From Iphione sp. A-MEVVRFRX5 (lineage: Eukaryota): a stretch of DNA of 64,000 bases. This document shows positions 33,201-59,328 of this stretch, piece after piece. The notes below the pieces were generated by a model, which saw only the letters and a program-made list of their open reading frames with translations, was not told the origin of the DNA and did no database searches. Where the stretch lies: positions 40,238,001 through 40,302,000 of the forward strand of contig OZ320323.1 in NCBI GenBank assembly GCA_976226885.1, given 5' to 3'. Both the position numbers and the translations under genes were made by a program. Numbering within the stretch: position 1 is the stretch's first letter; every line of letters starts with the position of its first letter.

Positions 33201-36200
33201 TGCTCATATTTAAGAACAGCCAGGGCACGGAGGGCGTGGAGATCGTCGCCGATCCGGACAGGTTCGAAGACGTAAGTACATCCCGGGGAAAAATCTTGTC
33301 AGATAAGCGCACCATTACAGACTTGGATATTATATGACTTGCAAAAAGTTTACGTGTAGATAGGAATAACTACAAATACATTTGCTAAGTGCTTGTAAAT
33401 GTTAATCTAGCTCACGCCGTGAAGAAAAGTCTCATTTTTTTACACGCGATAAGCTCGAATTGTTCATGTCTTGGTCCTCATTCAGGAGCCACATACTTTC
33501 CATAGTTTAGGTTTTCTAATCGCATTTCTTGTATTTTGCCTTTCAGTTCCTCGTGGCGTGCACTCAACGACTAGAGCTGCGTTCGTATGCCCGGGTTCTC
33601 TATGACTGGGAAGGGCGCGAGATCAATGACCTAAAAACTGGTGAGAGTGATTGTTGTGGAATTATTCTGTGACATTGTGTTGTAAAAAAAAATATATATA
33701 ATGTATTTTCGGTAGGCCTCTGGCGAATTTCTGACTTTAGTACCAGGACAGGACACAAGTCTTGGCGTAGGGCAGAAGTTGCAGTAAAAGCAATGCAATG
33801 TACCCTTCGGACTCCATTGACTGTATGCGGTGTGACCAAATGTCGTCTGCTTCTGCTTGTATTTGGCACCCATTTTTGTTCTTCCTGCTTTTTATAGCGC
33901 CGGTGTTGGACTCGTGCCTGCAGACTTGGACCACCCCTGTCCTCGGGCCCCTCTGGGTGTCCACAGGCGAGGGCTTCAGTCCCAAAGGCGTGAACGACTT
34001 TCTGGTGGGACTCATCAAATACACACGCTCGAAGGAGACCGAAGCAAAGCATTATGAGTCCGAGGTGAGGCCATGTTCTGAGTGTCCTGACTCCACCAGA
34101 TTAATATATATATGAGATTAACTTCGTTACCTTCATGCTTTTGAAGATAGATGAAACAGAACATTCCTCATGTCCATTAAATATGATTTCTATGGGTCTC
34201 TTTACTCAGATAGGCTATCCTTTGCTGTAATGATTTTGTTTCTTTTTCTCCAGCTCCGTCTGGCCAAAGCAGAGCACACCAGGGAACAAGTGAAAATCGT
34301 CGCCATCCTGTCCATGTCAGAAGGGGAAATAGAAGAGACATTAAAAATAGTAATTATTTTGGTGTTTTTTTTAAATAATAAGGTGATCAGATTTTCACTC
34401 AGTTTTAGCAAAAATATAGCCCAAGGAGATTGAAGATTATCATCTTAAGTCGTGTAAAAAAAAGTTAAAATTGAAACGTTTTGATCTTACCCATGCGCAA
34501 GTCTTCCTGTTTTTTAATTGTTTTTCTTACAGCATAATACAATTTTCATTCGAAAATTCTTTCTACTGCTTTACGACTTCGACAGGGGTTGCCTGTCTGT
34601 AAATGTGAACCCCCCCCCCACTCCTGTGTGTAAATCTCCAGTTGTGGCTTGGCTTGTGTTTGTAGGTTCAGAAAGATATCGAAGACTTCAACCGGGCACT
34701 AAAACGACTCAAGCAGCAAATGAATAAGCTGAAAGAAATGGTTGCGGACGAAGAGGTAGGAGCCGCTAATGAACTAAACACACAGACACTACCATCTTAA
34801 GTGCGACAACCTTTTTGAAAGTGTTTATTTTAATGGTTTTCGAAAAAAAATGTATTACACTTTCATACCAGTAAGTTGCATTAGAATATAACTAACATGA
34901 GAGTATAACAGACCTCATCAATGAGATTGATCTCCGCCTTTTCTCTACCCAATCACAGGAGTTGGGGGTGGGCTACAAGTTGCAGTATATGGGCGAATAC
35001 GACATGGATCACCGCCTGGTGGGAGCCAAAGGAATCAGGCTCAAGGTCAGTTCAAGGGCTTTTTACATTTTTTTTATGACGTACCAGTTACACATTGTTT
35101 TCTGTTTTTGTTGAGTGCTAGTCTAGCCACTTCATTCATTGAAGCAGAGAATACAAGCCTCAGTTTAAACGTAAACTTCAGGAAGATTACCGGACCTTTA
35201 GTTGAATTTCTTTCATTTCCTGAAAATCCACTGCCAAAGAAGTGCATTTTGAAGAACGATACACACAGAAGTGATGGTTGATATAGGGGTGAGAAGATTC
35301 TTGTTGGTCATTTTAGCCAAACAGGCTCTGTTCCCATTGATTTCTTCCTGTAAAATGAACAATCCTCATAAGGCAAAGATAATTGAACCAAAAAACGAAA
35401 ATTCCCCCCCCCCCCCGATAAGTCCTCTTGGCTAATGAATGATACAAACAGAATCGATGGTTAATATGGGAATAAGAAGATTCGTGCAGATCATTTTAGC
35501 CAACAGGCTCTGTTCCTATTAATTTCATCCTATAAAATGAACAAGCTGCATAAGGCAAAGATAATTTGGCCAGAAAATGAAGATTAATTTGTTCCCAGAT
35601 GAATCCCTTCTGCTAATGAGCTTATCCCGGTAATGAGTCTGCGGTAAACAGAAGTGTGGCTATCTAAAGGAACAGGCTATTAACACTACATTACTGTCAG
35701 ATGGTACTCATCATACTTTAATATTACCATTTTCTTCTCATGTTTAGGTGTATGAGAACGGTTCCTACGAGGATGAGACCACCCTCTACTTCAACCTCGC
35801 CCAGGCTGCTAAGGGGCTTGGGAAGGACCAATCGAAGTTGCTCGCCAGGGTAAGTCCATTCATATTGAGCAGCTCGTAGAGTAGTTCGCCTTTAGCACCA
35901 CCAGTTGGCCCATGGCATTATTTCTAACCCTGTCAGAGTTTTAATGATGCTTTGTGGAATGCCAGCTGTTTTTTTTTTAATCCTTATAGCTTTCTTCCCA
36001 GCAGTATATCTTGCATGATTTAGTCGACCCGTCCGGCCATATTTGAGCGACTTTTCAATGACAATGTTACTATTTACACTCTCTTTTCGACTATGTCACA
36101 AAATATCGTTATTTCCATTGGTTGAGTGTCTATTATGACGTCACAAATGGCGAAATATCTTTAGTTGTAGCGGGGTGGCTGACACTCAGGTGATCCATCA

Positions 36201-39200
36201 AATTGACGGATCGGCAGAGTGCCTGCCGCCCTGTAAGATAGCGAAGTGCCATTCATTGGACTTTATTACGGAATGAATCTATAGTTGTTGTCTCTTTATA
36301 CGCCGTGTACTGATGCTTCCTCCTTTTCTGAAAATGTTATCAACTGTGAAGTCTTTTTTCTCACCCACAAGATGGATATCTAGCTACGGGTCTCGATAGT
36401 AGTTCAAAACCTGAGGTGTTTCTATACATATATGGGTTACCTGGAGTAGTTCTGCGCGGTGACTAGCAGGCATAATTTTGTAACGCATCATGAAGGAGAA
36501 TACACCCTTGAGCCCTGTGTTCCCTCCCCCCACAGCTGCTGGATGAGTGTAGCTCCCACCACGTCCTCGCTCAGCCCAAGGCCAATACGACCATGAAGCC
36601 TGTGGCTCAGAAGATCTTCGACAAGCTTGGCAACGAAATCACCAACGTATATGACCTGGAGTACGACCAGGAGGTGTGGCTCTCCTTCGGCGAGCCTTGG
36701 AAGAACCCCTTCAGTACGTATACTCAAACAGTCGGTGGCCATAATGACATAGGAGAATGTAATGTTTCAGCCGAGTCTTACTTGATGGTAGCCTAACTAA
36801 ACGTTGGATGTGATTAGACCATTTGGTTCTTGGACGAGTAACTTTTATTTTCCTACTATTCATTTTTCACACTTGTATTTAACAGTGAAACGTTTTTCCT
36901 CCTTAAAGTATAGAGTCACTTTCCACACGACAGCCCAAAACGTAAATCTTGAAAGATATGTAAACATACCATGAAGCGTTCCCCACCAGACATTCCCCTT
37001 CCAAGTAGTACTAGAAAATGGCGATTTTTGCCGGGCGAAGATGTCAACATGCTGAGAAACGAACCGCGAGACAATCGCTCCATTTGAAGCATTGGGGGGG
37101 GGGGGGGGGGGAAACCCGTTTCCAGAGGACAGGGATTAATCCTTGAAGTTTTGTCATGGAAAAAGGACGCGGCATGGAAATCCTGAGCACGAGCAGGGCA
37201 CCCTCCTCCTCCATGCGCTTGTCCCCGTGAGTGATGACTTGGCTGCGGCTTCTGTACTTCATCCTCTCGTGTATCATTCTTTCCAGCCTTTGTGCTGTCG
37301 GCGCAGTTTGATAAGATCCGAGCCATCGACATCCAGGGTCAGAAACAGGCGACCATCCGCGAGCAGCTCATGTCCGAGGACTACGATGGCAACGAAAAGT
37401 AGGTCACCGGCGACCAATCGCGTCGCGGTTAATTAGGTCACCGCGACCCAGTTTAAATAGAGTAGGTCAGCCGGCCTGGCGGGCTAGCAGCCTCGTCGCT
37501 TGCAATGTGGGCCTCAGGGTGAAAAGTGCACTCAGCGAGAGTGACTCACGATCGAGCAATAAGAGCAATTCTTTGCCATTGGTAAAATTAGAGGGTTAGC
37601 TCATTGCAGATTGCACTTGTCTGGTAGAACGTTAGAAACTTCGAGGGCTGGGTTTACATCAATTTGCAGGGCCATTTCCAAGTACACGCACATATAATTC
37701 CCTGACGTATTTTTTTCGTAATTTGATTTGTTAAGTTATTATCTCGTTCTGAACCCTTTAAAACTAGAACTCATTATAATTCAACTGCATGTCAAATATA
37801 CATATATGTACATAAGATCTTGCCTATCTCGGTATCAGAACATGAACATGTGTTATATACTTGCATTTGATACATTTTGAATTTCATATCCCATAGTACC
37901 CGGTTTGTTACTTTCAATGCATGCATAGTCTCTACCACAAGCTCTCCACTTCAGTAAATAGAAATTTAAAAAAAAAAGAAATTTGTTGGCTACAGGCCCA
38001 ACTGCTGGGAAGCCGTGCACGGTGTTCCCGAGGCGTACAGCTGGATGACCGTCGGAGTCGACAGCGATCTCGGGGAGAAGGAGCACATCATGGGACTCCT
38101 AGAGTCAGGAGAGATCAGTGTGCAGAGCGACTTCCTTCGGGCCAAGGTAGGAAATGGCCTCGCGCAGACCCCCAACCCACCCACCGACTCACCCTCCCAC
38201 CCAGTGACCCACCTACCCACCCACCAAGTCACAGTAATGGTCGCAGCAGCAAATGAGATGTGCTTGTGTCTTTTGTTCCATATATCATAGAATAGCTCAA
38301 GAGGAAGTGGAGGGGCGATTACATATTCACTCTCTACTTTTATTCTATATTATTTTCACCTTTTTTTCGCCCTTTTCAATCTTGTTGTCTTCCTTTCAAA
38401 GTGTATTGCGAAAGAATTCCTGCTCCACTGGACTTTGTCATAGTTTCTGATCAGTGGAATAACGAAGAATACACCGCAGTTGGTTGTCAGTAACACTGCA
38501 ATCAGTAGTCCGAGTGAAATTTAACCAAATCGTAACTCTTGTCTTAGAAATACCGAGGAATCGGGTCATCCTAATGGTTTTATATATTTGATCCTGTCTA
38601 ACCAAGGACAATCCCGACCTCCTGCTGTATGTTGAACCGACGGTGAGCAACAAGGCCAAGAAGGGCTCCAAGAATCTCTGGCCGCCAGACTGTCAGCAGT
38701 GGGTCATCGCCAGAGTAAGTACAGATGAAATAATAACATTAGTCTCAGTGTGCTAAGGTTTCATTACAACAAATGTTGGGGCCAGTGTTACTTGAAATTT
38801 CAACAGAAGTTTACTAAATTGATGGCGGTAGTAAAATATTTTTATCAGATAAATCCGATGATTGTGGCCCAACTCTAAGAGGAGTGGGGGACCTGACGAA
38901 TGCTACTGTCTGCTCGTCCAGCCCTACATCATGATCTTGTGGGTCTCCTTTTAAACCATTGCATCGAATGCTCTTATTCTTAAATATGGTATTTCTCTAT
39001 ATTGGCTCTTGGCACTCCCTGACTTTTATATCATTCTAAGTGATTGAAAGGTCAAAAATATGTTTTAATATGTGGTTGTACACACAGACTAAGAATACAC
39101 TCAAGGTTAGTTTGTAAATATCAAGGCATGAAGCTATGTCATAGTCTGTGTGCCCAGGCAGAGCCAGTTAGTTCCACTTGATTGAATGGCTGGTGGGAGA

Positions 39201-43822: not shown

Positions 43823-45403
43823 TAGATACACACATACTCAGACAGAGAAGGAGAGAAGGAGAGGGAGAGACAGAAGGAGGGAGGCAGTGCCGGCTTTACA
43901 TATGTACAGACTCATCTAGAAATTCTGTGATCCGCATCTACCTGTTAGCCTCCAGTGTTCTGTTGACACACCAGATTTGGTACTGGAGGCAGAGTCCTTG
44001 AACCCTGGCGCCAAACTGATCATCAACCACAGCGCGCTGGATGCTAAGATCTCAGCTGAACCCAAGGAGGTGGTAACGACAGCAGAGAATGGGGAACAGG
44101 AGGGTGACCTCCCAGATACCCTCAAGAAAACGTAAGTTTAAGACATGTAGAAGCGGTCAGTCTGCCTTTCTATTAAAAAATATAGTACATGTCACGGTAA
44201 CATCCCAGCCTCTCCCTGATCCTCACTGTATTCGATTTTCCATGCTAGTAGGTGATTGCATCATGACAATAACGTATAGCCCCATTTCCCACATTTGTTT
44301 TGATTTGTTGGACCTTTTAAGATCCTACAGTATTACTTCCACTAAAACTGTTTCATGTCGATTTAGCGTTATTTACATTACCCCCGAGTCCAAATTGTCG
44401 GAGAGTCAAAAACATCATCAGACACCAACGAAATAATGACTTGCAACGCCCGTTGATAACTGAGGTGGTTCCTGTTCGTTTTCTGTCGGCAGCGGCCAGA
44501 CCCACCACGAAGTGTCTCATCAGAATGCAGAGGAGCGCTACAACAAGCGCAAGTACTCGTGGGAGCGCGAGGGTAAACAGCAAGAGGGCGGGGCCTCCAC
44601 CACCGAGGCAACAGGCAAGAGGTGGGTATTGTCCACATCTGTGAGTGAATAACTACGTAAGCATAGAAGATCAAGAGCTTGGTGTCGACCATGTCTAGAC
44701 TCAGTCAGAACCCAGAGAGTAGTCCATGATGTGTCTGTGGGTAAATAAGTACAGAAGTATAGACGATCAAGAGATGGGCATTGTCCATGTGTAGACCTCG
44801 TTAGAACAATCCATGATGTACCTATGAGCACCTGATCTCTTACAGGTATCTCCTGCCTGGGATATACTTTTCATGTATCTCCCACTTGGGGACTGCTTTG
44901 GGTTCAGTTTCGCCACGATGATATCATCCCAGGGGTCACCTCTATTATTAAAGATCCCATGTCTAAACCTTTTATCTGTACACCATCCACCAACAATAGC
45001 CCCAGCTTTTCTTGCTTAGACGTTTACATGATGAAATAATACACCTGTAGGTAGTCTCATTCTGCCACATCTATGCTTATCTTGGGCGTCACCTATCAAA
45101 CCGGCCTGTCATCTGTCTGTTACCCCCGACCGCTAGCAGGCAGCAGCAGCAAGGCCGGCGCCCTGCCAGCCAAACCCTGCACCTACAGACGTTTGTCTAC
45201 GAGGAGCCGGAGGGTTACATCGCCTCCAGAGCCGACAGCAGTCTGGTGCTGGGTGTGGAGGAGGTGGACGGCAATGTGTCGCAGGTGGTGCTTATGAAGC
45301 GGCGCATCGACGACATCAACCAGCGCTGGATCATCGACAAAGGGTAAATGCAAAGAGTTTATGATAATGAATAATGATATTACTATGGCAATAATATAAA
45401 TTT

Positions 45404-45435
<32 letters not shown>

Positions 45436-48400
45436 GACAAAGAAAGAGACCAAATGAGAGAATTGCCAGGTGCGAGAAACAAAGGAAACTTGAACAAATG
45501 AAAAAATGGTTTGTTCTTGATGAGAATGTCCTAAGGTGGTTGATGTGCTCTTGTTCCCTTCTGCCAGACTTGTCGTTGCTAAGGGCAACACGACACGCGT
45601 CCTGTCGGTTATTATGCCCAGCGGGGTTCCGGTCGACGAGGACGGACTTCCGCTCACCTACATCGGCAGTGAAGTCGCCTTACAGAACAGGAAGTTGACG
45701 CAGTTTGGACGAGCGAATCAGAGATGGGATTTCAATGCAGAGTTGGGCATCATTGGAGCGTTCCACACAAATACCTTCGACAAAGGTGCGTTTAATGCAA
45801 ATACCTCATAATTCCATCATGGAAGGTGTTCTATGATAGGAAGTCGAATAATTACTATATATGTATGGCACAGTGAGATGTGTTGCTACTACGTACAGTC
45901 GAATATCAATTCGTAGGTATGTCACATCCATGCACTGACCTTCTCAGTTAGACAACTGTGTCTGCTCACTAGTTCAAAGCCACGATCACATTTCACTGGT
46001 AAGTTCATGTAATCTACTAATTCAACTAACTGTAAGAGTAAAACTTTTTTGCATATGGAAGCTACACCTGAACATGTCGTTATTGTGTCTAGTTGTGTTA
46101 ATCGTTACTTTTACAGTGGGGTTAAACCGATGTAGAATGAAGGATCCTCTCAACGTTGTGGCGTTTTTTTTTTATTGTAGAGGTGACCGCAGCCAACAAA
46201 GCCAATGTCTGCACCTATGCAGTTATGCATGAAGAACAACTGGACCAGCCTGTGAGTATAGCTTCATAGTACTTCTCCTGTTTTTAGCCTTGTGTAAAAA
46301 TAAGATGGGAGGACGCCAAAACTCAGTGAAGTAATTTTCATTTTTGCTTTTGAGGACTATAGTTCAGTAACACAGGTCGTATGTCCCATCCATTACATAC
46401 ATGTGCCCACTAGGATAGTACTTACTATAACTGTGAGGTGATGGTACTCAGGCCCCCAATACACACCAGTTCACTTTGTCCCTAAAAAAAACTGAACATG
46501 ATGACTTGTCTCTGTAGGGTTATAGGGTGGAGCTGCCCACCAAGTCCGGCAACAAGGTCTTCAAGGTGTGCTCGTCTTGCGCCCGCGCCATGAGGGGGCG
46601 CCACAAGTTGGAGCGAATCGCCGGCAACGTGGACTTTGCATGTGATATGGGACAAAGTAAGTGGGCAGTCCTGCATGAAAAGGGCCGGAGGTCCGTATAT
46701 AGCGTTATCAGTAATGTGTTCTTGAATGGAACATTTCTTATGTACATATAGAGGGTTTTCTTGATTTTCTTCCCAAAATATCTTATTTTGACTTCGTTGT
46801 TGGATATATGGAAAGGTGAAGCAGCAGGTTTGGTTTTCGGCATAGCACATGGCTCAGTCCACCGATTTCATACTTTCATACTGAGGAAAACCATTTGGAG
46901 GTATCCTATCCAACAACAGTTGAGCCTTTTCCCAACTGAGAGCTGATTGCTGATCACTCGATCGAAACCACTCTAATGTGGCGCGGTGTTTGCATACAAA
47001 ATAAAGACAGACTATCCATCAATCGCCAACTATGTTAGGGATGAGTTGCCGGCAGCAGGCAGCTTTGACGCAGCCCATGAAGAATTCAGAGAGATTCACC
47101 GAGAACGTTTCATCATGAGGCACTCCAGCAACTTAATTGTCACAACTGACTTTGGGACATCACGTCGACTTTAGTACCAGCATAGGACACTAGGTGTCTC
47201 CCTGAGATACAGCCCAGTGGCGCCACCACAGTCAGCCATCTTGGTTGTTGTCACTTTTAGTCTAGCAGTCACCCAGTTCAGACCTGTCTTAGGATTCTTA
47301 CTGTTCTGTACTGTCACTGTTCTTTCTTTCTGCTATTTCTATCAGGATCACCAAAGGGAGTATTTTTTAAGCTTTACTTTGTTGATTGAACAGATACTTT
47401 GCGAATTGATCAGGGAGATGATGCTCTTTTCATCTCCTTCACTAGTTGCCGTAAGTCTGTGTCCACAGCCACTTTGGCCAGGTGGACGAAAGAGGTCATG
47501 GCGTTGTCAGGTGTGGACACGCAAGTGTTCTCCGCGCATTCTACTAGATCAGCTTCGTCTTTGAAGCTGGCTAAGATGGGAATGCCTTTGTCTGAAATTA
47601 TGAAGAGGGGCATGTGGTCGCATGCCAATACCTTCAAGTTGTTTTATTTGAAGGATATTCGGGATGGTGGACAGCAATAGTCTTTTCACTCATCCTCTGA
47701 GGCTTTGGGCTTTGAAGTCTCAGGGAGACACCTAGTGTCCTATGCTGGTACTAAAGTTAGTGGGTTACATGAACTTACAGTGAAGTGTGACCTTGACTTT
47801 GTACCAGTATTAGGACACAAGTGTCTAACTGCCCACCTCTCCCCTCCCATGTGGGCGTTTAGTTTCCTTCATCCTCATAGGTTTCATTCTCATCCTATTG
47901 CTGCAGGGTTCCTGACTTCTTTGAATAGTGACAACAACCAAGATGGCTGACTGTGGTGGCGCCACTGGGCTGTATCTCAGTTAGACACCTGTGTCCTAAT
48001 ACTGGTACAAAGTCAAGGTCACACTTCACTGTAAGTTCGTGTAACCCACTAATTATCAGCTGTGAATTGATGATTAGTTGTGAATTCGTTTCACACAGCG
48101 GTCGCCCAATCTCCCCCACATCGTCATTTTACTGCTTTTGATATGGTTGGACAGGGTGAATTTTACCGATCACCTCATCGCACAACAGCATCAAAATGAC
48201 GCTGCGACATTGTTTGCTTTCTGCTGGTCAATACTGGGGGCTCTGCTACGACAGTGTCATTATGATGTAAAAAAAGGCAATTGGTCAACTACTATGGCAC
48301 GATTTCCTCTGGCACTAACACGATTTCCTCTCTCATGTACCATATGCTTCTTCCACCCCCCTAAAGGTAAGAGCCTGGGCATCAAGCAGGTTGGCAGCTT

Positions 48401-51400
48401 CCAGTGCCTCAACGGCAAGGTGGACCTGCGGACGAGAGAGGCTGGTCACACCCTGCGCGAGTGGGAGGCTCAGCTTGAGAAGCTCAGGGAGGAGCTCAGC
48501 GTACGCGCCATCGCCAACAAGATCTCAGCTGCTCGGGTGCCCTTCACCATCAAGGTGCTGGCCTACAAGAACGGCCAGGGACGCATCCGACCGGGCGAGC
48601 TCATCATTGGATCCTCGGTGGCCGGCGTAAGTTAGCAGTGCCCAGCATAGATCATCAGACGCGACTGGGTTACCTCACCATTAGGATGAGTTCCTCGCTC
48701 CATTCATGGAAGAGATCTTGTTTGTATTGGGTGTATATATTGATTATGTCAAGGAGCCTGACGTATCCCTGTTTTGTCTTTCTTTTTCTTTTTTGACTTT
48801 AGAGAAATGTATAAAAAAGAGTAGGATTAGATACGGCAGGTACTTTGGCGCAAGATGCACTGAAGCGATTATCATCGTTGTAAGTTTGCTCTCAAAGAAA
48901 TTGCCCAGATTTTCCAGTTAAGGAGGTCTTTCAGATACAGTCGTAATGGATTCCTCGTTGTGAAAAGATAACACAGATTAAAACAAGAGACCGCTATAAC
49001 ACAGTATCCGTCCTGCTCGAATCTTCACTGTGTGTATTATATAACAGGTCGTTTTAATTGCACACCTTTTCCCATGCGCTCATACACACAGATCCTGGAG
49101 CAGTGCACGCACCGCCTGAGCCTCAACCAGGCCGCCCGCCGTCTCTACACGGCCGACGGCTTCATGGTGCTGGACCTGGAGGACCTGGTGCGCTGGGCGC
49201 AGCAGAACTACGTCAGTCAGGCCAAGGCTCAACTCCGCGCGCAGGCGGCAAACAAACCATCGGGTACGGCAGTTAGTAGTAAAAGAACCCCACCCACCCA
49301 CCCACCCACCCACCAAAGAATTTAAAACGACCCAAACAAATAAGTACATGTAAGTGGTAAGGCATGGTTAATAAATAATTGGTACGGCTTGTATGTAGAT
49401 GCATTGGACACGTATAGGTATTCCTCTGTTAACGAATCCTCTCCTAACGAAAAACTGCTGTTTAATGTATCGTGTACTTGTATATGTTGATCGTTTGTCA
49501 TGGAAAAAAGTCTGACTTATGGATCCATTTTCTGACAGAGTTAACATTTGGTCACGATGCACTGACAACCAGAACTCAGATGAGTAACTTGGCTGGGTCT
49601 TTACTCGTACCCAACCCGACACAGCAAATAGAGAGCGATGGCTTCATCCACATGTGGAACTTCTACTGCGCCAAGCCGGGCAAGCTCTATCTCCTGGTAA
49701 GTGGTGGGAGGTGAAAGGATTTTGTATTGATTACCGTCTATACAAGCAGTAGATCTGTCCAAAAAGAGTGGCCTCAGGGCACAACATCTATAGAATTAAC
49801 CACTTACATTATATAAAAGTTTGGTTCAAAAAGGTGTTGCTACTAGATGTAGATGTATAGCTGTACAAGGAATTGTAGAATTTGACTATTTAAGACACTT
49901 ATTACCTCCTGTGCCCGTCTCATGAACTTGTGTAGGTGACTTCCTAAATATGTGAGGCACAATGTAGGAAATGTTCCTTATTCTATTAAAAACGTGTTAA
50001 AATGGTAATATTATTTTCTCTGACTTTTTTCTTAAAATATTCGACTCTATAGCTTACCAAGAAGGAAACTTCATTGTTCGCTTTCTTGCTTTTCTTAATG
50101 TTTTAATTTTTGGGGGGTCTCGATGAAACCCTTTACCATAACTCAGTGATATGCATTAACACGCTATGATAAATAAACAAAATTCTCACGACTCTAGATC
50201 CTGACACCAGATGGTAGGAACAAAAGCGCGTTCCATGTTGAGGACCAGGTGGACTTCGACATCCAGCAGGCAGGAGAGTACAGCGTCGATATGACCAACG
50301 TCTCTGACACACCTTGGTAAGGGAAAAAATATCGTGTGTGTGTGTGTTTTTTTTTAACTCGAGGAGGTTAACGCATGTGGTGATGCTGTTGTATGTAACA
50401 GTGGAGTGATGCTCACTCAACCCAACACCCCCCCCCCCAAATAACCGAACCACCGGCCATCCACATAGGTGGCTGAGTTACGAGCGTACAGTTTTGTTTT
50501 AATTAGTGGAGATTAAGGCAATGAGGAACTCCTTGCACTCATTGTCTCTGACCTCCAATACGAGCTTTGGCGATGTACATGGCACATTCGTGTGAAGTGT
50601 GTGTACCTAGTAAGCATAACCAAAACCCCGTGCTTATCTGAACGATTTCCCTTGAAAGACACCCTGTTTGGTTGAGACAGTGTCACTTTATTGCTGCAAG
50701 TATAAAGAACACTCTAAAAAAACATTTCACGATAATGTGGGGCCTGGGTTGATGAATAGATTTTGGCTTGCGCACTAGGTAGCAAATTCAAACTCCGTCA
50801 AAAGAAGTTTGGTTATCACGGCGTTTTTTTTTTCTCATCATAGTAAACTTGAAGGCTGAGGTAAGGCCATGACCTCATCCTCTTGAGGCCCTAAAATTGC
50901 TCCGGCTGTAAATGAAATGATTCAGTACATTCTTCGGTAATTAACGAAGATATTGTTGCCTGGACACACGCACGCACACAATCGATTTCTGCATATAATA
51001 TATATGCTTATATGGACTAGGGTGCAGAAATCTGGAATTCAAAGTAGGTTTCTCATATTGAGCTGACATTCTGTTCAAAATCCTTGTGTCTTAATGGTGG
51101 TGGGTTTTCAATGTAAAATGAATACAGGTAACTCTCACGCAGGAGACCATCTCTAGTACGGGCGGATATGGTCCCTGTTATAATCTGATCTGCTCTACGG
51201 TCTCTTTTTATATAAAACTATGACTTTTGGTTCAGCAAAAAAGCTGGTCTCTCCCATGGTCTAATCTTCTCCTCCGTGATATGGTCTCTAAGTAAGAGTG
51301 GACTGTAGTCCGTCTGATATTTCACAGGCAAAAGTTGCCGCTTTATTAACAATATCGAATCATTTCTTTATGCACAGGTTTGGCAAGGGGATGGCAGTAA

Positions 51401-53414
51401 AGAAGGGTTGTGTCATTGGTATGTACTGGCCTGGCGAGTCAATGATTCCCTATGACGTGGACGGCAAGGAGTCCACAGAGCTGCTCTCTCTGCCACTGAA
51501 AGGCCCACCCTCGGCCAAGGACACGCTCACCTTGAAGGCATCGCAGCAAAAGGGAACACTGAAATTCTCACTGAACGCCATGATCAAGACCTCAGGTCAG
51601 ATTCGACTTTTTTTTATGCCTTAACCAGTTCGGGGACCTATTTGTATGTACAGTCAGCACTCATCATTTTCACCCCCTCCCCCCCCCCATGTACAGATTC
51701 CATTGTTATATATGGTTGCCCTCGTCATCTTCACCTTCAGTGCATTGATTCCTTGGTAGATAGCTGCCCTCATCATCTTAACCCTTCATGTACGGATCCC
51801 CTGTTTTACAGGTGTCCATCTTCACCCGCGTGTGCAGATTCTCACTTTAAGCTCTCCCTTTAAGTCCTCATCATCTTCAGGCAGTAATTTGTTCAATAGA
51901 GTCAGTGCTTGTGCTGACGAGTCACACACATCCTGCTTACTGGTGCTGCCAGTGAGGAAGGCTTTGCTGATTCACACTCCTGTCAGATGCATGAGGTACT
52001 CTCGGGCTCTCACATGTGAACCCGTCACCACCGCTGGCCGTGGGAGGGTGGGTGGTTGGGGGTGGGGGTTATGGTTGAGGACCAGGACGAGGGGACTGTA
52101 ACCCTCAAAAGTTCACTTTCTTCTTGCCCCTTTGCCTCATAGAGGGTGGGGGAGGGGGTGGGCGCTTAGGAATACATGTACTGCTGTCATCTTATCATAC
52201 ATGTACTGTTGTCATCATGACTTTATGGGCATTGTAACTTCCAAACTACTGCATCATTTGAATCAGTTCAGGTTTTAATTATATGGCGTTTTCCTTTATA
52301 GACACTTACCACTGGCTGATTCTTGTCTTATTTCAAGGGTTTTAAAGGTTGAATTCATGTGTTTTGTAACATGACTGTACATGCGTACATGTATACACAT
52401 ACATAGAGATTCCAAGGCATGGAACCTATGTGTTATGCTCACCCAGGCAGAACTAATTAGTTCCAGTTGACTGAACGACAGGACACAGTAGACCTCGTAG
52501 GTCCTTATTTATCATTGAAACTCTATTCAACATACATTCTTTGTTCAGGTGTTTCATTATATTTTGCTCTGGGTATTATGTGTCAAGATATACTCTCAGC
52601 AATAAATTTACTGGCGTCTCTTTTTTCCCCTTTTTCAGCCGCAGATGAACCTGGTAAGTTAACTGTTTATAACATATAGCTAGTATCAGATTGAATTACC
52701 ATAGTGAATCTCTGCATAAGATACATGTATATATATATATATACATGTACAGGTATAGTTTCTGGCTACACTGCATAGATAGTTGTAAATTGATGGGGCC
52801 TTATTTTCTATACACATAACTGACTGTTCAGTCGAAATCCAATAGACATTCCTTTCCAAAAGAAAGCTTGAATCCTGCATTTGCAAGTTTGCTGCTAGTT
52901 GGCTGCATGGGGAACTGAATGTTTTACTCAAGTTTATCAGAACTTGTGTATGTTCTGCGTGATATTGTTCATTGCAGGCAAAGAGACTTGAATAGAGCTA
53001 ATCCCTGTTTGTCAAAACAGGAGTTTTTCTGCTGTGAGTAAAAGTGTTAGAAATAGGCATGTGTCTCTTCACCAACTATTTAAGAAGTCCGAAGGACTAG
53101 GGATCAATCATCTTGAAGGCAGCTAGTTGACTGTTTGCTCGTGTATTTCCAGTTATGAACGGCAATCTGATGGACAAGGTGGACTTAGAGGAGAGTGACT
53201 GGGAGGACGAGGAGGACGACAACGAGGAGGAGCAGCCGCCTGCTGCCCCGAACAATGACGACGTGGATGACTCAGGTTGGTCGCCATTACATCTGCATAT
53301 ACATGTATATGTATACATGTATATTTGTCCTCCACCTCTAGGAGGGGTGGGGGACCTTAGGATCACTGCTGTCTGACTGTCCGACCTTCCGTCACAACCT
53401 TTTAGTGTAGTTTC

Positions 53415-53450
<36 letters not shown>

Positions 53451-56400
53451 GCGTGCGTGCGTGTGTTTGTGTGTGCGCGCATATGCACACACACTTTTGA
53501 GACGTGGCTACATCCTCTCTTTCTGAAAAAAATTCTTAAGTGGACTCGTTGTTAGAAACTTCGTTACAGCTGGCCTACGTGAATGCACGCGTACTGATAC
53601 AAATTTGTCTCCTTTTGGTATGCATGTTAATTAATAAGTGTTTTTTTCTGACTGCTATAAAGGCGTCTCGTTCCTCGGAGGCTGTGTTTATAAAAGCACA
53701 TACATGTACCTGTAATTTTACCGTTCTCCTATACAGAAGACTTTGCGATCGGCTACGAGGTACTGCCTAACAGGGCCAAGCTTGGCGGCGTCCCTGCCTG
53801 CATGCTTGTGCCCAACCCGACCGAGGAGGTGGAGCAAGATGGCTACGTGTACATGTGGAACTTCTACTGCACCAAGCCGGGCAAACTCTTCGTTCAGGTG
53901 AGGCAACCTTACATCTTGTAAATGTCCTGTTCTTAGGTTGTGTGTGTTTAACGCAGCACTGAAAAAGCAAAGTCTACATATATATATTCACTCAGTTGAA
54001 CTTGACTCTATGTATAGCTGCTTTTTCACAGAGGTAGATTATGATAGTGCCTAAAAATTAGGCAAAGATAATTGGATTTTATATACAAAATTCTCTCAAG
54101 ATAGATACATGTATTGTGAAATTTAGTAGATCTCCCCTTCCAAGATACGACCAGATATCCTAAATTTCTTGTTGAGCTGATTGTTATTCTTATGTATAAG
54201 TACATGTACGTCCATTTTGGTATTGCTTGTTCATAGATTCTAAGACCCGACACGAAGAATTTGAATGCTTTCCATGTGGAGGACCAGGCAGATTTTGAGA
54301 TCCGCCAAGCCGGAGAGTACAATGTGGACATGACCAACCTCGCCAATACACCATGGTATGATATACCACCCGCACCCCCACCCGCAACCCCATACCATTC
54401 CTATGAGCAAACGTAAACGTATTTGTCCCATTGTCCTTTCATCATAAAGGAATGGAATGTACCTAATTCTAACTTTTCAAGTGTTCCGTACTTCCTACAC
54501 TACACTGATATCCATCTTTTGTCTATGGCTCTCTAGCATGAAAATGATGTTGGGGGAGGAGCTTATAATTGAGAGATCGATTGAGAGAGGATGGGGAGAG
54601 GTAACACTGCCAGAGACTTGTTGGCCTTTGGTTCTAGGCAAGGCTAACAAGGTACTGAAAGACTAATCGACAGACTGATTGGTAGAGGTGGGGGTCTGGG
54701 GTGGGGCAGAAGACACTCGATTCTGTGTATAGGAAGTTAGCATGTGGCTGTAAAAGCCCCCCAACCCCACCCCAACCACCACCACCACCACCTTGAGTGT
54801 TCCCCGCTGTGTGTTTATTAGACCATGACGAATGCGATCACTGGACCATGACGAACGCAACCATGGACACGACCACTGGAGCATGAAAATCACACACCGG
54901 ATCAGTGACAATGAAGAAGACAGAGAGACGGATAGCGATACAGGGACAGAGAGAGTGTGTGTGTGTTTGTGCGTGAGAGTTGCGTACATTTAGAAAAATC
55001 TGGGGTAATGTGGGGAGATATACTAAAACGATGCATAGATGCAGCACGCCCAGGGATATTCCCACTGTGGCCGTACCTCCAGTTCGCATCTGTGATGCTC
55101 ACTTTTACTTTCCACCTTTTTCTCGTCATATGTGATATTGTGTTATTGCTTGCCATCAGTAGAATCTGGGTTCTGATCTCTTCTTTGGTCTCCATCTGTC
55201 CATTTCTATCTATCTATCTGTCTGTCTGTCTGTCTGTTGTCTCTCACACGCATGCATGCACTCACACATTTGCGCGTGCCTGTGCACACGCCCACTTACT
55301 CTCTCCCTCAATCCCACAATCCCTCTTTCTTTCCCGTTGGATCATTTCCTCATTGTCTGTTTTCACACTGTCCTCTATCTGAGATTCTCTGTCTCTTCCC
55401 CAAGAACCCACGCTTGCTACTGCTTTGTCCGACTATACACACCCTTGTACTTCCAGGTTTGGGAAGGGAATGCGTGTGAAGCGTGGTTCAGTCATCGGCT
55501 TCTACTGCTCCGGTGAATCCATGATTCCGTTCGACTTGGACGAGACCATCCACCAGGCACCTTTCTACCAGGAGCTCCACAGTCCGCCCTCCATCAAGGA
55601 CACCATCACCTTGAAGACCTGGCAGCAGTCTGGCACCCGCAAGTACTCCCTCAACGCCTTCATCCGACCAGGTAAGGGGTGCTTAGCAAGTGGAATCGTC
55701 AGTATAGAATACAAGGCCGTGGTAGATTTAAACTCATGCTTCAACGCATAACTATGAGATCACTATAGACCACTTGAGATCACGCAAGCACATGACTCAG
55801 AACCTCATGTACATAACCCTGAAAAGACTTATCTGAGAAAACGTACTCGGAGAAAACGTACTAAATGTAAGTTGATCCTAAAAAATCAGGTGCATTTCCT
55901 ATTATTTAGTGCGGTGAAAAGTTTGTTTTTAAAAGGATGAATTGTAGTATGTGAGTATGAAAAAAGCATTCATATGGAAAGAATTTGTCTATTGATATAT
56001 GTACTCCTGGTCCTTTAGACATGCCACGATAGTTCACAGACCTCTCTAAGATGTTGAGAATATGTGATAGTTATGTCTTTGTTATCGTCGTCGTCGTAGC
56101 AAACAAGGTCGATGTGCCCAGCAAAAAATCAGCAGCACCTCCTTCCAGTAAGAAAACGAATGAGAAGACGAAGAAGAACAAGAAGAAGAAGAGGTTACGA
56201 GGACCACACGTGGACACGCCGCCCACCGAGCTGGTGCTCAAGTACCCCATAGAGGTGTGGGTGTCGGGTGGCGAACCGTTCATTAAACCTGAAAGTAAGT
56301 GTAGTTGTATAGTGGTCAGTTAGAGGAATCATGAGAATAATCATTAGTCCCATTTAAAAAAAAAGAAAATAGTCCCCTACCTTCAAGAGTGGGGTGGGCT

Positions 56401-58793
56401 GGGGGTGCACTCTAAGAACGCTACTGGCTAACCATCCGATCCTTCATCAGGACCTCGTGGTTCTTATAATTCTCAAACTATAAGGATAAAAGAATTGATC
56501 TTTTAGTTTGGTACTTTACTGTATGGGCGTTTACCCGTGGTATATTTTGGTATCTTTTAAAGCATTTTAAATGCAAAAGAGGGAGGGAGTTTTAGGTAAC
56601 AAGGGAGAGGATGGATTTACAGTCATTGTCTGCTCACCAAACCAGGAACATTTAGTTTCACCTGATTGCACAGCTGGCCGAAATATGATACGTTATCCAA
56701 CAAGGTCGATGTGCCCAGCAAGTTCCAACACCATTCTCTGAATTAGATCTTTCAAGAACTTTTCAAAACATTATTAAAACACTGTAAAAATGTTATTTCA
56801 TAACATTTCTTCATAAAACATCGTCAAAACGTTATGTGTTTGCTGGGAACGCAACAGATATAACATCCTAAACTGCCTCAAGATACAAAGAGTTGGTTTG
56901 TTAGATCAACTTTATTTCAATGGAACAATATTTTTTATCATCGTCTTTATATCTACCCATGGATCTTCTTTTTTATTCACAGAGGTTGAACGACAGCTCG
57001 TTCACTCTATGCAGCAGAGAGAGCAGCGGGCAGCTGTGTCGTACGAGCTGGAGAAGGAGAAGCACATCCTTCGTCTGATGCAAGGTGACACATCTTATCT
57101 TCAATAATGTGCGATAAACAGAATCTGTAACTCACAAGAGCCTCCTCCAGATTCAGTATTTGCTCTGTACAGTAGTAACTCATCCTGTGAGCAACTCATG
57201 TAGGAGGGCAATTAACAGCAAGTTATACTGGTCCCACCACTTTATAATGCATGAAAAATGGAGCCCTCTAATTAGGGCTACCCCTGTATTAAGGGCAGAA
57301 TTGTCCGCCCCGCCCCCCGTGGTCGCATTAGAGCGTTTCTGCTGTACGCTACCGTGAGGTGGTTACTGTCCATTTCACGAGAAAAGTATGCTCTATTTTG
57401 CTGATATTTAGCTTGCTTTCCGAAGTCTTCCTGACACATAGCATCCACACCTGTTTGGTGGTGTTGTTGCTTACAATTATTGATATATGAGTTAGGTGTG
57501 CACATGGTCTCTCTTGTACCATAAACAAGACTGCTTTGATAAATAAAATTCATAATGTATTCAATATCAAATAGCAGTGGATACCTCTAAGAGCAGTGCC
57601 TGTCAAATGCGACTGTGAGAGCACAGCAACAGAGACCAATGTAGAATAGTAACGCCTTTGTGTTTCCATGGCAACAGGACGCCGTCTGGATGAGATGGCC
57701 TCTGGTCAGTACAAGGCCACCATGAACCCGACCCACCCCGTCCTCATTGAGGGTCACTGGCAGGAGCCGACCGCAGACGAACAGCAGAAACATGACACTG
57801 TCCACCAACTACAGGTAAATAGGACACTTGTAGCAACAGCAACACCGGTAAGAAGGAAGTACAGGTACCTAGGGCAAGTGTTACAAGGGCTAAAAGAAGG
57901 TCTAAAGCATGACACTGTCCACCAACTTACAGGTAGCTAAGTCACTTGTAATAACAGCACTGGTAAGAAGGAAGTACATGTACAGGCACCTGGGGCAAAT
58001 GTGACAAGGGCACTGGTTAACAGAAGGCTTAAAGTATAATACTGTCCATCCACTTCAGGGAACTAGGTCATGTTAATGTATGACAGTGACATTGATAAAG
58101 TCCCGATCAATCCTGCTCATCCAGTTCATAAGAAACAGATTCCCCGACTGTCTCCACATACCGTACTCGGCAGACCCGAATTTTTAACAATTCTTACCAT
58201 TTATGACTCTCCATGATGTTCTCTATCAGTCTTCAATGTGGTCATTATTTCATATCCTCGTACAAACATGTAATAGATTATGTCTGCCAATGATCCTGGG
58301 CAGTCCGCTAATCACGACAGCTCCCCCCCCCCCCCATGACAGCTTTCCCCGCCTACACACATATACCCAGCAGGAAAGATTAAGCCAAGTCTTATGCTTA
58401 ACTATTTCACCTGTTCAGGATAGGAGTCTTGGGGGGGTAATTTTGATCTGTTCCTGCACTCTCCAGTTAAGGTTACCTGGAACAATGCTCGCATGATCAT
58501 ATCTTACTGTTTGCTTTTTCGTTCCATAGACTCACCTCTCTGACATGAGGTCCTCGCAGAAGCCCAAAACGAAAACATGTAATGTGAACACCACCAGCCG
58601 CCTCTACACACAACCCGCCATGGTATGTCAGTGGGTGCTCTTTTCACATTTCAAATCGATTTGGAAGTAGGCAATTGACTGCTTCTAAATTGTCTTAGTT
58701 TTGTAGGTTGCCTCTTGTTTCATCCCATGTATATAAGATGGATAGCTCTCGAACAGTGTATGTGTCACTGTATTATCATTATTATTATTATTA

Positions 58794-58858
<65 letters not shown>

Positions 58859-59241
58859 GGTTTACAGAAGCGTGTGCTCGTATTCCCCAATGGAGAGAGC
58901 ATTGCTCGAGCAGTCTACATCTGGGGGGAGACGGTGGCACAGCTGCTCGATAACTGCACTGTACGCCTCAACCTACGCAAGGCGGGCCGTTACCTCTTCA
59001 ACATGGCAGGCAATGTCGTAAGTTGACACATTCCATAAAAAACAATGGATACTCTTCAAGAAACAGAATTGTTTTTCTCATTCTCTGTCAATCGCACAAT
59101 GGCTGCCTCTTTTCTTCCTAACTTTATTTAGTCTCTTCATTCACTGTCTCTCTCTTTTCTCTTTCTGCCCTTCAAATTGTTTTTGGTCTGTCATGTGTCG
59201 TATGCCTTGTTTTTTCTCTTTTCGCATCCATGTATTCCTTA

Positions 59242-59328
<87 letters not shown>

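What the first reader, a model, noticed from the sequence alone, without database searches (positions are those of the whole stretch)
49539..55671. Tandem duplicated, unidentified 165-aa three-exon module
Seen: exons 33-35 and 38-40 each total exactly 495 nt with identical phases (1-0-2-1) and an identical 119-nt middle exon (28/40 identical residues). Shared motifs are LVPNPT..E.DG...MWNFYC.KPGKL, AFHVEDQ.DF.I.QAGEY.VDMTN, WFGKGM.VK.G.VIG.Y..GESMIP.D and K.SLNA. Alternating hydrophobic and aromatic residues suggest a beta-sandwich. Known: class 1-1 symmetric modules are the typical shuffled animal domains, mostly extracellular. Inference: a mobile jelly-roll/lectin-like domain (possibly DUF4082-like, from motif memory only) recruited into an intracellular ciliary or microtubule protein. 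I cannot assign it to a named family.
Basis: partly seen in the sequence, partly recalled or inferred. Interest (0 to 1): 0.7.

Follow-up and report, generated by a model that had tools for sequence, protein, structure and literature searches.

The report
Duplicated lectin-like module in DCDC1 gene
Two old tandem copies of an unnamed, roughly 160-residue domain, whose relatives sit in secreted proteins and are predicted to fold as a lectin-like beta-sandwich, were moved by exon shuffling into this animal's only DCDC1-type microtubule-protein gene, apparently inside one of its doublecortin-like domains.

Summary
Exons 49539-49696/50198-50316/51378-51595 and 53737-53897/54237-54355/55457-55671 each total 495 nt, have phases 1-0-2-1, and are 45/69/57% identical exon by exon (E 1e-22 to 1e-27).

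No Pfam or PDB sequence match exists. Profile comparison (hhalign 97-98%) links both modules collinearly to an unnamed eukaryotic family of ~155-aa repeats in secreted proteins (signal peptide, TSP1 repeats, a Cys pair). Two members fold with pLDDT 93-95 as a jelly-roll beta-sandwich. The closest solved folds are the Cwp84 "lectin-like" domain and phage decoration or tail domains (Z 10-12).

The same genome holds further members. One is a three-exon copy with identical intron positions and phases inside an alpha-2-macroglobulin/TEP-like gene, so this is a mobile 1-1 module.

The host gene is the genome's only DCDC1 orthologue. The cassette (376 aa with two linker exons) lies between the body of a DCX-like domain and the only canonical terminal strand motif for that domain, on exon 41. 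An orthologous locus in another species has one module at the same site.

DUF4082 membership is not supported. Function (probably a binding adaptor) is inferred. No RNA evidence was available. The spliced module itself was neither searched nor folded.

The parts
49092..49263 (+). Exon 32. It encodes the helix-to-strand-4 part of a DCX-like (beta-grasp) domain plus a conserved tail (…NYVSQAKAQLRAQ…). The donor is phase 1.
   Evidence: Pfam DCX 25.2 bits (cut-off 22) and DCX2_DCDC1 E 9e-6. It is 78% identical to L001 4098-4271. The donor was read.
49539..49696 (+). Module 1, exon 1 (158 nt, phase 1 to 0). Carries LVPNPT…MWNFYCAKPGKL.
   Evidence: Hit by an HMM built from secreted repeats only, E 1e-4, model positions 3-51.
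50198..50316 (+). Module 1, exon 2 (119 nt, phase 0 to 2).
51378..51595 (+). Module 1, exon 3 (218 nt, phase 2 to 1). Carries FGKGM.VKKG.VIG.Y.PGESMIPYD … FSLNA.
   Evidence: Secreted-repeat HMM positions 84-120. hhalign of the exon-3 profile against the secreted family gives 98.2%.
52639..52653 (+). Putative 15-nt linker micro-exon (phase 1 to 1). Predicted from splice consensus only, so it is uncertain.
   Evidence: Read. There is no orthologous support, because L001 has no second module.
53153..53275 (+). Acidic linker exon (123 nt, phase 1 to 1; D/E-rich).
   Evidence: The open frame and splice sites were read directly. It is not conserved in L001.
53737..53897 (+). Module 2, exon 1 (161 nt; 158 nt if the second AG of the NAGNAG acceptor is used).
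   Evidence: It is 72% identical to L001 8108-8266. hhalign of the exon-1 profile gives 97.4%.
54237..54355 (+). Module 2, exon 2 (119 nt).
   Evidence: It is 74% identical to L001 9039-9155.
55457..55671 (+). Module 2, exon 3 (215 nt).
   Evidence: It is 62% identical to L001 10046-10258. Secreted-repeat HMM E 3e-8, positions 84-154.
56100..56294 (+). Exon 41 (phase 1 to 1). A K-rich linker followed by …KYPIEVWVSGGEPF…, the canonical terminal strand motif of the gene's DCX-like domains.
   Evidence: Weak Pfam Ubiquitin_DCDC1 match at positions 77-94 of 95, E 0.23. Motif comparison with the other DCX-like domains of the gene. It is 76% identical to L001 11039-11140.
48360..48626 (+). Exon 31. 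A coiled segment plus the first strands of the DCX-like domain (…VPFTIKVLAYKNGQG…). It ends in phase 0.
   Evidence: It is 86% identical to L001 3424-3696.

Best explanation
The two 495-nt exon triplets are ancient tandem paralogues of one protein domain of about 160 residues.

Shown:
- The domain belongs to an unnamed eukaryotic family otherwise found as single or tandem repeats in secreted proteins.
- Complete members of that family are predicted with high confidence to be jelly-roll beta-sandwiches of the galactose-binding-like / Cwp84 'lectin-like' kind.
- The module is a class 1-1 three-exon unit. The same genome carries it with identical intron positions and phases in an A2M/TEP-like gene.
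- The host gene is the genome's single DCDC1 orthologue.
- An orthologous locus in another species has one module at the same position.

Inferred:
- The unit entered a phase-1 intron in the strand-4/strand-5 loop of a DCX-like beta-grasp domain by exon shuffling.
- It lost the family's Cys pair once it became cytosolic.
- It was later duplicated in tandem together with an acidic linker.
- The modules probably act as two ligand- or protein-binding heads. They would be displayed on flexible acidic and basic linkers from a microtubule-associated DCX-like domain, in the way PHR, IFT25 or discoidin-type sandwiches act as adaptors.
For: Duplication and phases.

Homology to the secreted family:
- The whole-library HMMER search found P0003, with three stretches.
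- Exon-wise BLAST hits to P0003 are collinear.
- An HMM built only from secreted repeats hits exon 1 and exon 3 of both modules at model positions 3-53 and 84-154.
- hhalign gives 98.2% (E 4e-14) for exon 3 and 97.4% (E 1.5e-11) for exon 1.

Secreted nature of the relatives: signal peptide and Cys pair in P0003, TSP1 repeats in P0014.

Fold:
- AlphaFold2 gives pLDDT 95.1 and 93.2, pTM 0.89, all-beta.
- VIA-align gives Cwp84 4ci7_A at Z 11.8 and 10.3, 9jwb_Z at 11.4 and 11.0, 9d93 at 10.5 and 10.3.
- The ESM Atlas search gives TM 0.78-0.79 to actinobacterial surface-protein domains and 0.68 to Lectin_like.

Mobility:
- The own-genome profile search finds members on C1, C11, C13 and C15.
- The C13 copy has phases 1-0-2-1 at the same positions.
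- It lies next to an A2M_BRD-like exon and about 10 kb upstream (in the gene's direction) of TED_complement exons on the same strand.

Host gene: PF24478 and PF25510 score over their cut-offs only in this gene.

Position in the DCX-like domain:
- Four of the gene's five other DCX-like domains end in [VIL][WY][VIL]S.GE.[FWY]. For this domain that motif is on exon 41.
- The paralogous DCX2_DCDC1 domain has a phase-1 intron in the same loop.

Orthologue: L001 is collinear with the window and has one module between the exon-32 and exon-41 orthologues.

Constraint: dN is 0.23-0.39 against saturated dS.
Against: - No RNA evidence: no RNA run was listed, so exon inclusion and the two linker exons rest on splice consensus, frame compatibility and cross-species conservation.
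- The window's own spliced module was not folded or searched as a whole. Its fold is inferred from homology at 22-30% identity.
- Exon 32 also contains a degenerate 'NYVSQ' at the right spacing to be strand 5. The cassette might therefore follow the DCX-like domain rather than interrupt it.
- The direction of transfer (secreted to cytosolic) is inferred only from where the family is otherwise found.
- No binding function has been shown for any member, and 'lectin-like' is a fold label only.
- The protein collections searched are poor in annotated animal proteomes. Presence of the module in DCDC1 of other phyla, including vertebrates, is unknown.
Confidence: 0.75

Rival explanations
1. The cassette is appended after a complete DCX-like domain rather than inserted in it. 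The 'NYVSQAKAQL' segment of exon 32 would be strand 5. The VWVSGGEPF motif on exon 41 would then be a relic or part of something else.
For: The spacing from the conserved Gly to 'YVS' (17 residues) matches intact domains of the same gene (14-16 residues). The segment is conserved in L001 as ENYVTQAKAQLRAQ.
Against: The segment lacks the G-E-x-[FWY] part that four of the five other DCX-like domains of the gene have. Exon 41 has a perfect copy of that part and weakly matches the last 18 positions of Pfam Ubiquitin_DCDC1. An orphan terminal strand on exon 41 would have no partner domain.
Confidence: 0.25
2. The modules are alternative cassette exons that most transcripts skip. Skipping would give an uninterrupted DCX-like domain. 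Alternatively they are unexpressed relics or a separate nested gene.
For: Every unit of the cassette is frame-symmetric (1-1). Exon 32 (donor phase 1) can join exon 41 (acceptor phase 1) directly. No RNA run was available to show inclusion.
Against: Both modules keep open frames, consensus splice sites and strong purifying selection: dN 0.23-0.39 against saturated dS. A module is conserved at the same site in another species. No start or signal-peptide exon was noticed next to the modules. Their phases fit the host exons.
Confidence: 0.15
3. The domain is just a very divergent member of an already named family (DUF4082, Lectin_like PF18560 or PHR), so nothing new as a family.
For: The feature search on exon 3 lists Lectin_like at 0.88, PHR at 0.86 and DUF4082 at 0.82, all below the 0.9 lead level. 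The fold match to the Cwp84 lectin-like domain is Z 10-12. A remote paralogue, L030, has a DUF4082 hit at E 0.038.
Against: Pfam gives no hit at E<=10 for the six exons or for complete domains of seven relatives. No PDB sequence match was found with the family profile. Sequence identity in the structural alignments is 6-11%. DUF4082 was not found in the genome.
Confidence: 0.2

Closest known systems
Cwp84 'lectin-like' domain (PDB 4ci7, Pfam Lectin_like PF18560) and related phage capsid-decoration and tail-tip domains (9jwb_Z, 9d93)
   Same: They share the jelly-roll beta-sandwich topology over about 140 of 155 residues (Z 10.3-11.8, rmsd 2.8-3.3 Å) with two modelled members of the family. Like the family's other members, they are extracellular or surface-exposed.
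   Different: There is no detectable sequence relationship (6-10% identity, no HMM hit). The known domains are bacterial or viral, not animal. No ligand is established for Cwp84's domain. The window's copies sit in a cytosolic microtubule protein.
PHR domain (MYCBP2, BTBD1/2) and IFT25: cytosolic beta-sandwich adaptors
   Same: They are intracellular beta-sandwiches of the same broad fold class, used for protein binding. IFT25 is ciliary. This is the functional analogy for a sandwich in a cytoskeletal protein.
   Different: The fold match is only middling (Z 5-7). There is no sequence match and the strand details differ.
DUF4082 (PF13313)
   Same: It is a predicted all-beta domain of similar size. 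There are weak feature and HMM hints.
   Different: It is a bacterial family. No hit reaches significance for the modules or for their close relatives.
Ricin-type lectin domain reported in FLJ46154/DCDC5 (now part of DCDC1; Reiner et al. 2006, PMC1550402)
   Same: It is a precedent for a lectin-type, normally extracellular, domain inside a DCX-family protein. The window gene has QxW-like motifs upstream (45150-45787).
   Different: Ricin B is a beta-trefoil, a different fold and family. It lies elsewhere in the gene.
Class 1-1 exon-shuffled modules of animal extracellular proteins (Patthy's rules; established knowledge)
   Same: Both flanking introns are phase 1. The multi-exon module is found with identical internal phases in an unrelated gene (A2M/TEP-like). 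The module has been tandemly duplicated.
   Different: The recipient is an intracellular protein. The insertion point is apparently inside another domain's loop, not between domains.

Membership tests
Unnamed secreted-repeat family (P0003-like; motifs IPNP…, G.I.LQVWR, GDV.GFYFPG.S.IPFD, W.PCR.YS.SA) | Collinear profile match over the whole ~155-aa unit | tested here: met
   An HMM built from secreted repeats only hits exon 1 (positions 3-53) and exon 3 (84-154) of both modules. hhalign gives 97.4% and 98.2%. Exon 2 aligns in between in the joint alignment and has a weak BLAST hit.
Unnamed secreted-repeat family (P0003-like) | Conserved Cys pair (…GHEC… and …NPCR…) and a secretory context | tested here: not met
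   Both Cys positions are replaced in modules 1 and 2 and in the L001/L002 orthologues. The host protein is a DCX-family, cytosolic protein. These modules therefore form a distinct Cys-less subgroup.
Unnamed secreted-repeat family (P0003-like) | Jelly-roll beta-sandwich fold | not testable with these tools
The fold is shown for P0003:22-176 (pLDDT 95) and for the own-genome member L028:5266-5751 (pLDDT 93). The window's module is split over three exons.
Lectin_like (PF18560) | HMM match at or above the gathering score | tested here: not met
   No Pfam hit at E<=10 for the exons or for complete relatives.
Lectin_like (PF18560) | Structural superposition on the Cwp84 lectin-like domain | tested here: met
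   4ci7_A gives Z 11.8 (139 aa, 2.8 Å) and Z 10.3 (137 aa, 2.9 Å) for two family members. The Atlas Lectin_like cluster gives TM 0.68.
DUF4082 (PF13313) | HMM match at or above the gathering score (28.4 bits) | tested here: not met
   No hit for the modules or close relatives. One remote paralogue scores 14.4 bits, E 0.038. The whole-genome scan found nothing, but its control genomes also found nothing.
PHR (PF08005) | HMM match, or a clear fold match | tested here: not met
   No HMM hit. The fold match is only Z 5.7-7.0, within the range the tool calls common.
DCDC1 orthologue (host gene) | Presence of the Pfam DCDC1-specific domains DCX2_DCDC1 (PF24478) and Ubiquitin_DCDC1 (PF25510) | tested here: met
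   Both score over their cut-offs, and only in this gene: window 33170-33995 and 35739-36703, with further DCX-like copies at 31.0, 43.3, 49.1 and 58.9 kb.
DCX / doublecortin domain (flanking exons 31-32 and 41) | HMM match to the body of the domain, and the terminal strand motif | tested here: inconclusive
   The body is met: DCX scores 25.2 bits against a cut-off of 22. For the terminal strand, the canonical motif is on exon 41, but a degenerate candidate also exists in exon 32.
Class 1-1 exon-shuffled module | Phase-1 introns on both sides, and the same module with the same internal phases in an unrelated gene | tested here: met
   Phases were read. The C13 copy (L020, minus strand, 6861-5310) has phases 1-0-2-1 at the same positions. 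It lies in an A2M/TEP-like gene.

The most novel reading that the evidence does not exclude
This would be a so far unnamed eukaryotic beta-sandwich domain family, normally extracellular and disulfide-bonded. It was carried by exon shuffling into a cytosolic microtubule-associated protein. There it sits as a domain within a domain in the strand-4/strand-5 loop of a doublecortin-type beta-grasp, lost its disulfide, and was duplicated. The result is a DCX-like domain that displays two lectin-like heads. That would be a rare documented case of extracellular-to-intracellular module transfer and a new architecture for the DCX superfamily.
Probability: 0.45. Interest if true: 0.65.

Novelty: new variant of a known kind. 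Interest (0 to 1): 0.5.

Why it matters
DCDC1/DCDC5 is one of the least understood members of the doublecortin superfamily.

If the reading holds, this gene shows:
- a domain family that current family libraries do not name;
- a clear exon-shuffling footprint, with the same three-exon 1-1 module in a thioester-protein gene and in a cytoskeletal gene;
- a possible domain-in-domain insertion into the doublecortin fold.

Each point gives concrete constructs to test. One test is what a lectin-like head does on a microtubule-binding scaffold. Another is whether DCX-like domains tolerate large loop insertions.

It also flags a family that genome annotation pipelines will leave unlabelled in many marine eukaryotes.

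Tried and rejected
- **Pfam on single exons and on complete relatives:** no hits.
- **PDB sequence searches, single sequence and profile:** nothing.
- **Whole-library HMMER with exon 3:** two orthologous exon fragments and P0003. The other six hits (P0004-P0009) scored on short stretches of long proteins carrying unrelated Pfam domains. I set them aside as probably spurious, except P0009, which the P0003 search then recovered at E 3e-106 as a true family member.
- **Word search with exon 3:** no candidates.
- **Word searches with P0003 and with the family profile:** only unnamed metagenome or metatranscriptome proteins.
- **Cluster look-up:** no names.
- **Metagenome contig scan with the exon-3 alignment:** no relatives.
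- **Foldseek against PDB:** no match at E<=0.001. The aligner that does not depend on Foldseek was needed.
- **RNA runs:** none was listed, so read laying was not used and splicing is unconfirmed.
- **DUF4082 scan of the genome:** nothing, and its controls were also silent, so it is uninformative.
- **Dating the duplication against the species split:** quartet site counts (4:2:1) and a saturated dS were inconclusive.
- **Literature:** searches on DCDC1/DCDC5 architecture gave only the 2006 report of a ricin domain. Accession searches for the related samples found nothing.
- **Taxon:** the window's species was not determined.
- **Left out by rule:** joining the three exons of a module into one protein for any search or fold. 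All searches were done exon by exon, by reference.


Full report
**1. The observation**

The + strand between 49.5 and 55.7 kb holds two sets of three exons with consensus AG/GT boundaries.
- Module 1: 49539-49696, 50198-50316, 51378-51595 (158 + 119 + 218 = 495 nt).
- Module 2: 53737-53897, 54237-54355, 55457-55671 (161 + 119 + 215 = 495 nt).

Both run phase 1-0-2-1. Exon 38 has a NAGNAG acceptor (53737 or 53740). The orthologous locus supports 53737.

Exon by exon the copies are 45%, 69% and 57% identical, with E-values of 3e-23, 8e-22 and 2e-27. Overall identity is 90/162.

Synonymous sites between the copies are saturated (pS 0.70), while dN is 0.30. This is an old duplication kept under purifying selection, not an assembly artefact.

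**2.

Every search used single exons by reference. The spliced 165-aa module itself was therefore neither searched nor folded. What follows about its fold is inferred from relatives that are encoded contiguously.

**3. No named family**

- Pfam gives nothing at E<=10 for any of the six exons.
- PDB sequences give nothing.
- The exhaustive HMMER search with exon 3 returned two short fragments, P0001 and P0002, and a 490-aa protein, P0003.
- P0001 and P0002 are the orthologous exon in other eukaryotic assemblies.
- The remaining hits looked like long proteins with unrelated domains, matched on short stretches, and I set them aside. One of them, P0009, later proved to be a family member.

**4. 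An unnamed secreted-protein family**

P0003 has a signal peptide and three tandem ~155-aa repeats. Its few relatives are all unnamed and come from metagenome or metatranscriptome-sized contigs. One of them has thrombospondin type-1 repeats (P0014). All carry a conserved Cys pair. No Pfam family covers these complete domains either.

Evidence that the window modules are homologous to this family:
- Exon-wise BLAST hits to P0003 are collinear.
- An HMM built only from the secreted repeats hits exon 1 (model positions 3-53) and exon 3 (84-154) of both modules.
- Profile-profile comparison gives 98.2% (E 4e-14) for the exon-3 profile and 97.4% (E 1.5e-11) for the exon-1 profile. Both land on the expected parts of the repeat.

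The window modules lack both cysteines. That fits a cytosolic protein.

**5. Fold**

- P0003:22-176 folds with mean pLDDT 95.1 and pTM 0.89, all-beta.
- A single-exon member from the window's own genome (L028:5266-5751) folds with pLDDT 93.2 and pTM 0.89.
- Foldseek against PDB found no match at E<=0.001.

The full structural scan gave the same top three for both models:

| Chain | What it is | Z (model 1 / model 2) |
|---|---|---|
| 4ci7_A | Cwp84 lectin-like domain | 11.8 / 10.3 |
| 9jwb_Z | cyanophage capsid protein | 11.4 / 11.0 |
| 9d93 | mycobacteriophage tail-tip domain | 10.5 / 10.3 |

Below these come carbohydrate-esterase N-terminal domains (Z 7.5-8.8), PHR domains (about 6-7), and CBM32, F-lectin, discoidin and IFT25 (about 5-6).

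The ESM Atlas search gave TM 0.78-0.79 to unannotated actinobacterial surface-protein domains and 0.68 to a Lectin_like cluster.

The family is therefore a jelly-roll beta-sandwich of the galactose-binding-like kind. 'Lectin-like' is a fold label only; no ligand is known.

The only trace is E 0.038 in a remote paralogue and a 0.82 feature score.

**6. A mobile module**

A single exon peptide finds only the two window copies in the 1.18-Gb genome. The family profile finds more members on contigs C1, C11, C13 and C15.

The C13 copy (L020, minus strand, 6861-5310) is split into three exons at the same positions, with the same phases 1-0-2-1, and keeps the Cys pair. Just downstream is an exon resembling the alpha-2-macroglobulin bait-region domain (E 9e-4). 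About 10 kb further along the same strand are clear TED_complement exons (E 1e-10 to 9e-24). So it sits in a thioester-protein (A2M/TEP-like) gene.

Other members have other intron patterns or none.

**7. Host gene and site of insertion**

The Pfam families specific to DCDC1 score over their cut-offs only in this gene:
- DCX2_DCDC1 at window 33170-33995.
- Ubiquitin_DCDC1 at window 35739-36703.
- Further DCX-like copies lie at 31.0, 43.3, 49.1 and 58.9 kb.

Exons 31 and 32 (up to 48626, and 49092-49263) encode the body of one such domain (DCX 25.2 bits).

Four of the gene's five other DCX-like domains end in [VIL][WY][VIL]S.GE.[FWY]. For this domain, that motif (VWVSGGEPF) lies on exon 41 (56100-56294). 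It comes after module 1, a putative 15-nt exon (52639-52653), an acidic 123-nt exon (53153-53275), module 2 and a Lys-rich stretch.

Exon 32 ends in phase 1 and exon 41 starts in phase 1. The paralogous DCX2_DCDC1 domain has a phase-1 intron in the same loop. The cassette is 1128 nt (376 aa), the figure another reader of this scan gave for the same stretch.

The simplest reading is that the module entered a phase-1 intron in the strand-4/strand-5 loop. A rival is that a degenerate 'NYVSQ' in exon 32 is strand 5 and the cassette merely follows the domain. I put that at about one in four.

**8. Orthologue**

L001 comes from a 1.9-Mb eukaryotic contig of another species. It is collinear with the window from 44.5 to 60 kb at 63-86% amino-acid identity per exon. 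Between the exon-32 and exon-41 orthologues it has exactly one three-exon module and no trace of a second.

That module is closer to module 2 (68%) than to module 1 (51%). Modules 1 and 2 are 56% identical to each other.

Either the duplication predates the species split and one copy was lost in that lineage, or module 1 diverged faster. Informative-site counts (4:2:1) and the saturated dS cannot decide between these.

A third species (L002) has exons 2 and 3 with an intron at the same place.

**9. Likely function (inferred)**

In this reading the protein is a large multi-DCX microtubule-associated protein. From one DCX-like domain it displays two beta-sandwich heads. The heads are separated by an acidic linker and followed by a basic one.

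By analogy with cytosolic sandwiches such as PHR and IFT25, the most likely role is binding of a partner protein or a modified tubulin surface. Nothing here tests that.

No RNA run was listed for this stretch. Expression, exon inclusion and possible skipping of the frame-symmetric cassette therefore remain open.

**10. Verdict**

The domain is a new, unnamed sequence family with a known fold. It has a clear exon-shuffling history and an unusual position inside a doublecortin-type domain. Interest is moderate.

Noticed in passing
G000:C13:57376310-57377861 (L020, minus strand, 6861-5310), with neighbours to C13:57363446: An alpha-2-macroglobulin/TEP-like gene carries one copy of the same three-exon 1-1 module just upstream of its bait-region-like exon. 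This would be an unusual extra domain for a thioester protein.
   Followed up: partly
G000:C1:100049265-100049750 (L028 5266-5751); C11:64.62, 64.64, 65.72, 88.59 and 27.04 Mb; C15:54.784-54.789 Mb: There are further members of the unnamed family in the same genome, with different intron patterns. The C1 copy is a single exon. Several lie in a loose cluster on C11. Their genes were not characterised.
   Followed up: partly
window 53735-53740: Exon 38 has a tandem NAGNAG acceptor (cagaag). The two choices differ by one codon (Glu).
   Followed up: partly
window 45150-45344 and 45566-45787: Two conserved exons carry QRW motifs (…INQRWIID…, …ANQRWDFN…) reminiscent of the QxW repeats of a ricin B beta-trefoil, the domain reported for FLJ46154/DCDC5. 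Pfam gave no hit on the single exons.
   Followed up: partly
window 56100-56200 and 53153-53275: A strongly basic stretch (Lys-rich, start of exon 41) and a strongly acidic exon (D/E-rich, exon 37) flank module 2. Such oppositely charged linkers might pair with each other or with tubulin tails.
   Followed up: no
window about 60015-60200: A run of N starts directly after a conserved coding exon of the same gene (59838-60014, 76% identical to L001 15411-15587). The gene model is interrupted there. The N run was left untouched.
   Followed up: no
window 58770-58860, 53410-53480 and 59230-59330: Simple repeats lie in introns of the gene: a trinucleotide run that reads as poly-Ile or poly-Tyr in open frames, a GT/GC-rich dinucleotide run, and a CT/GA run.
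   Followed up: no
window 47170-48052: Another first-stage note places a miniature DIRS1-like element in the intron upstream of exon 31. Inverted ORF pairs are visible there. It was not examined.
   Followed up: no
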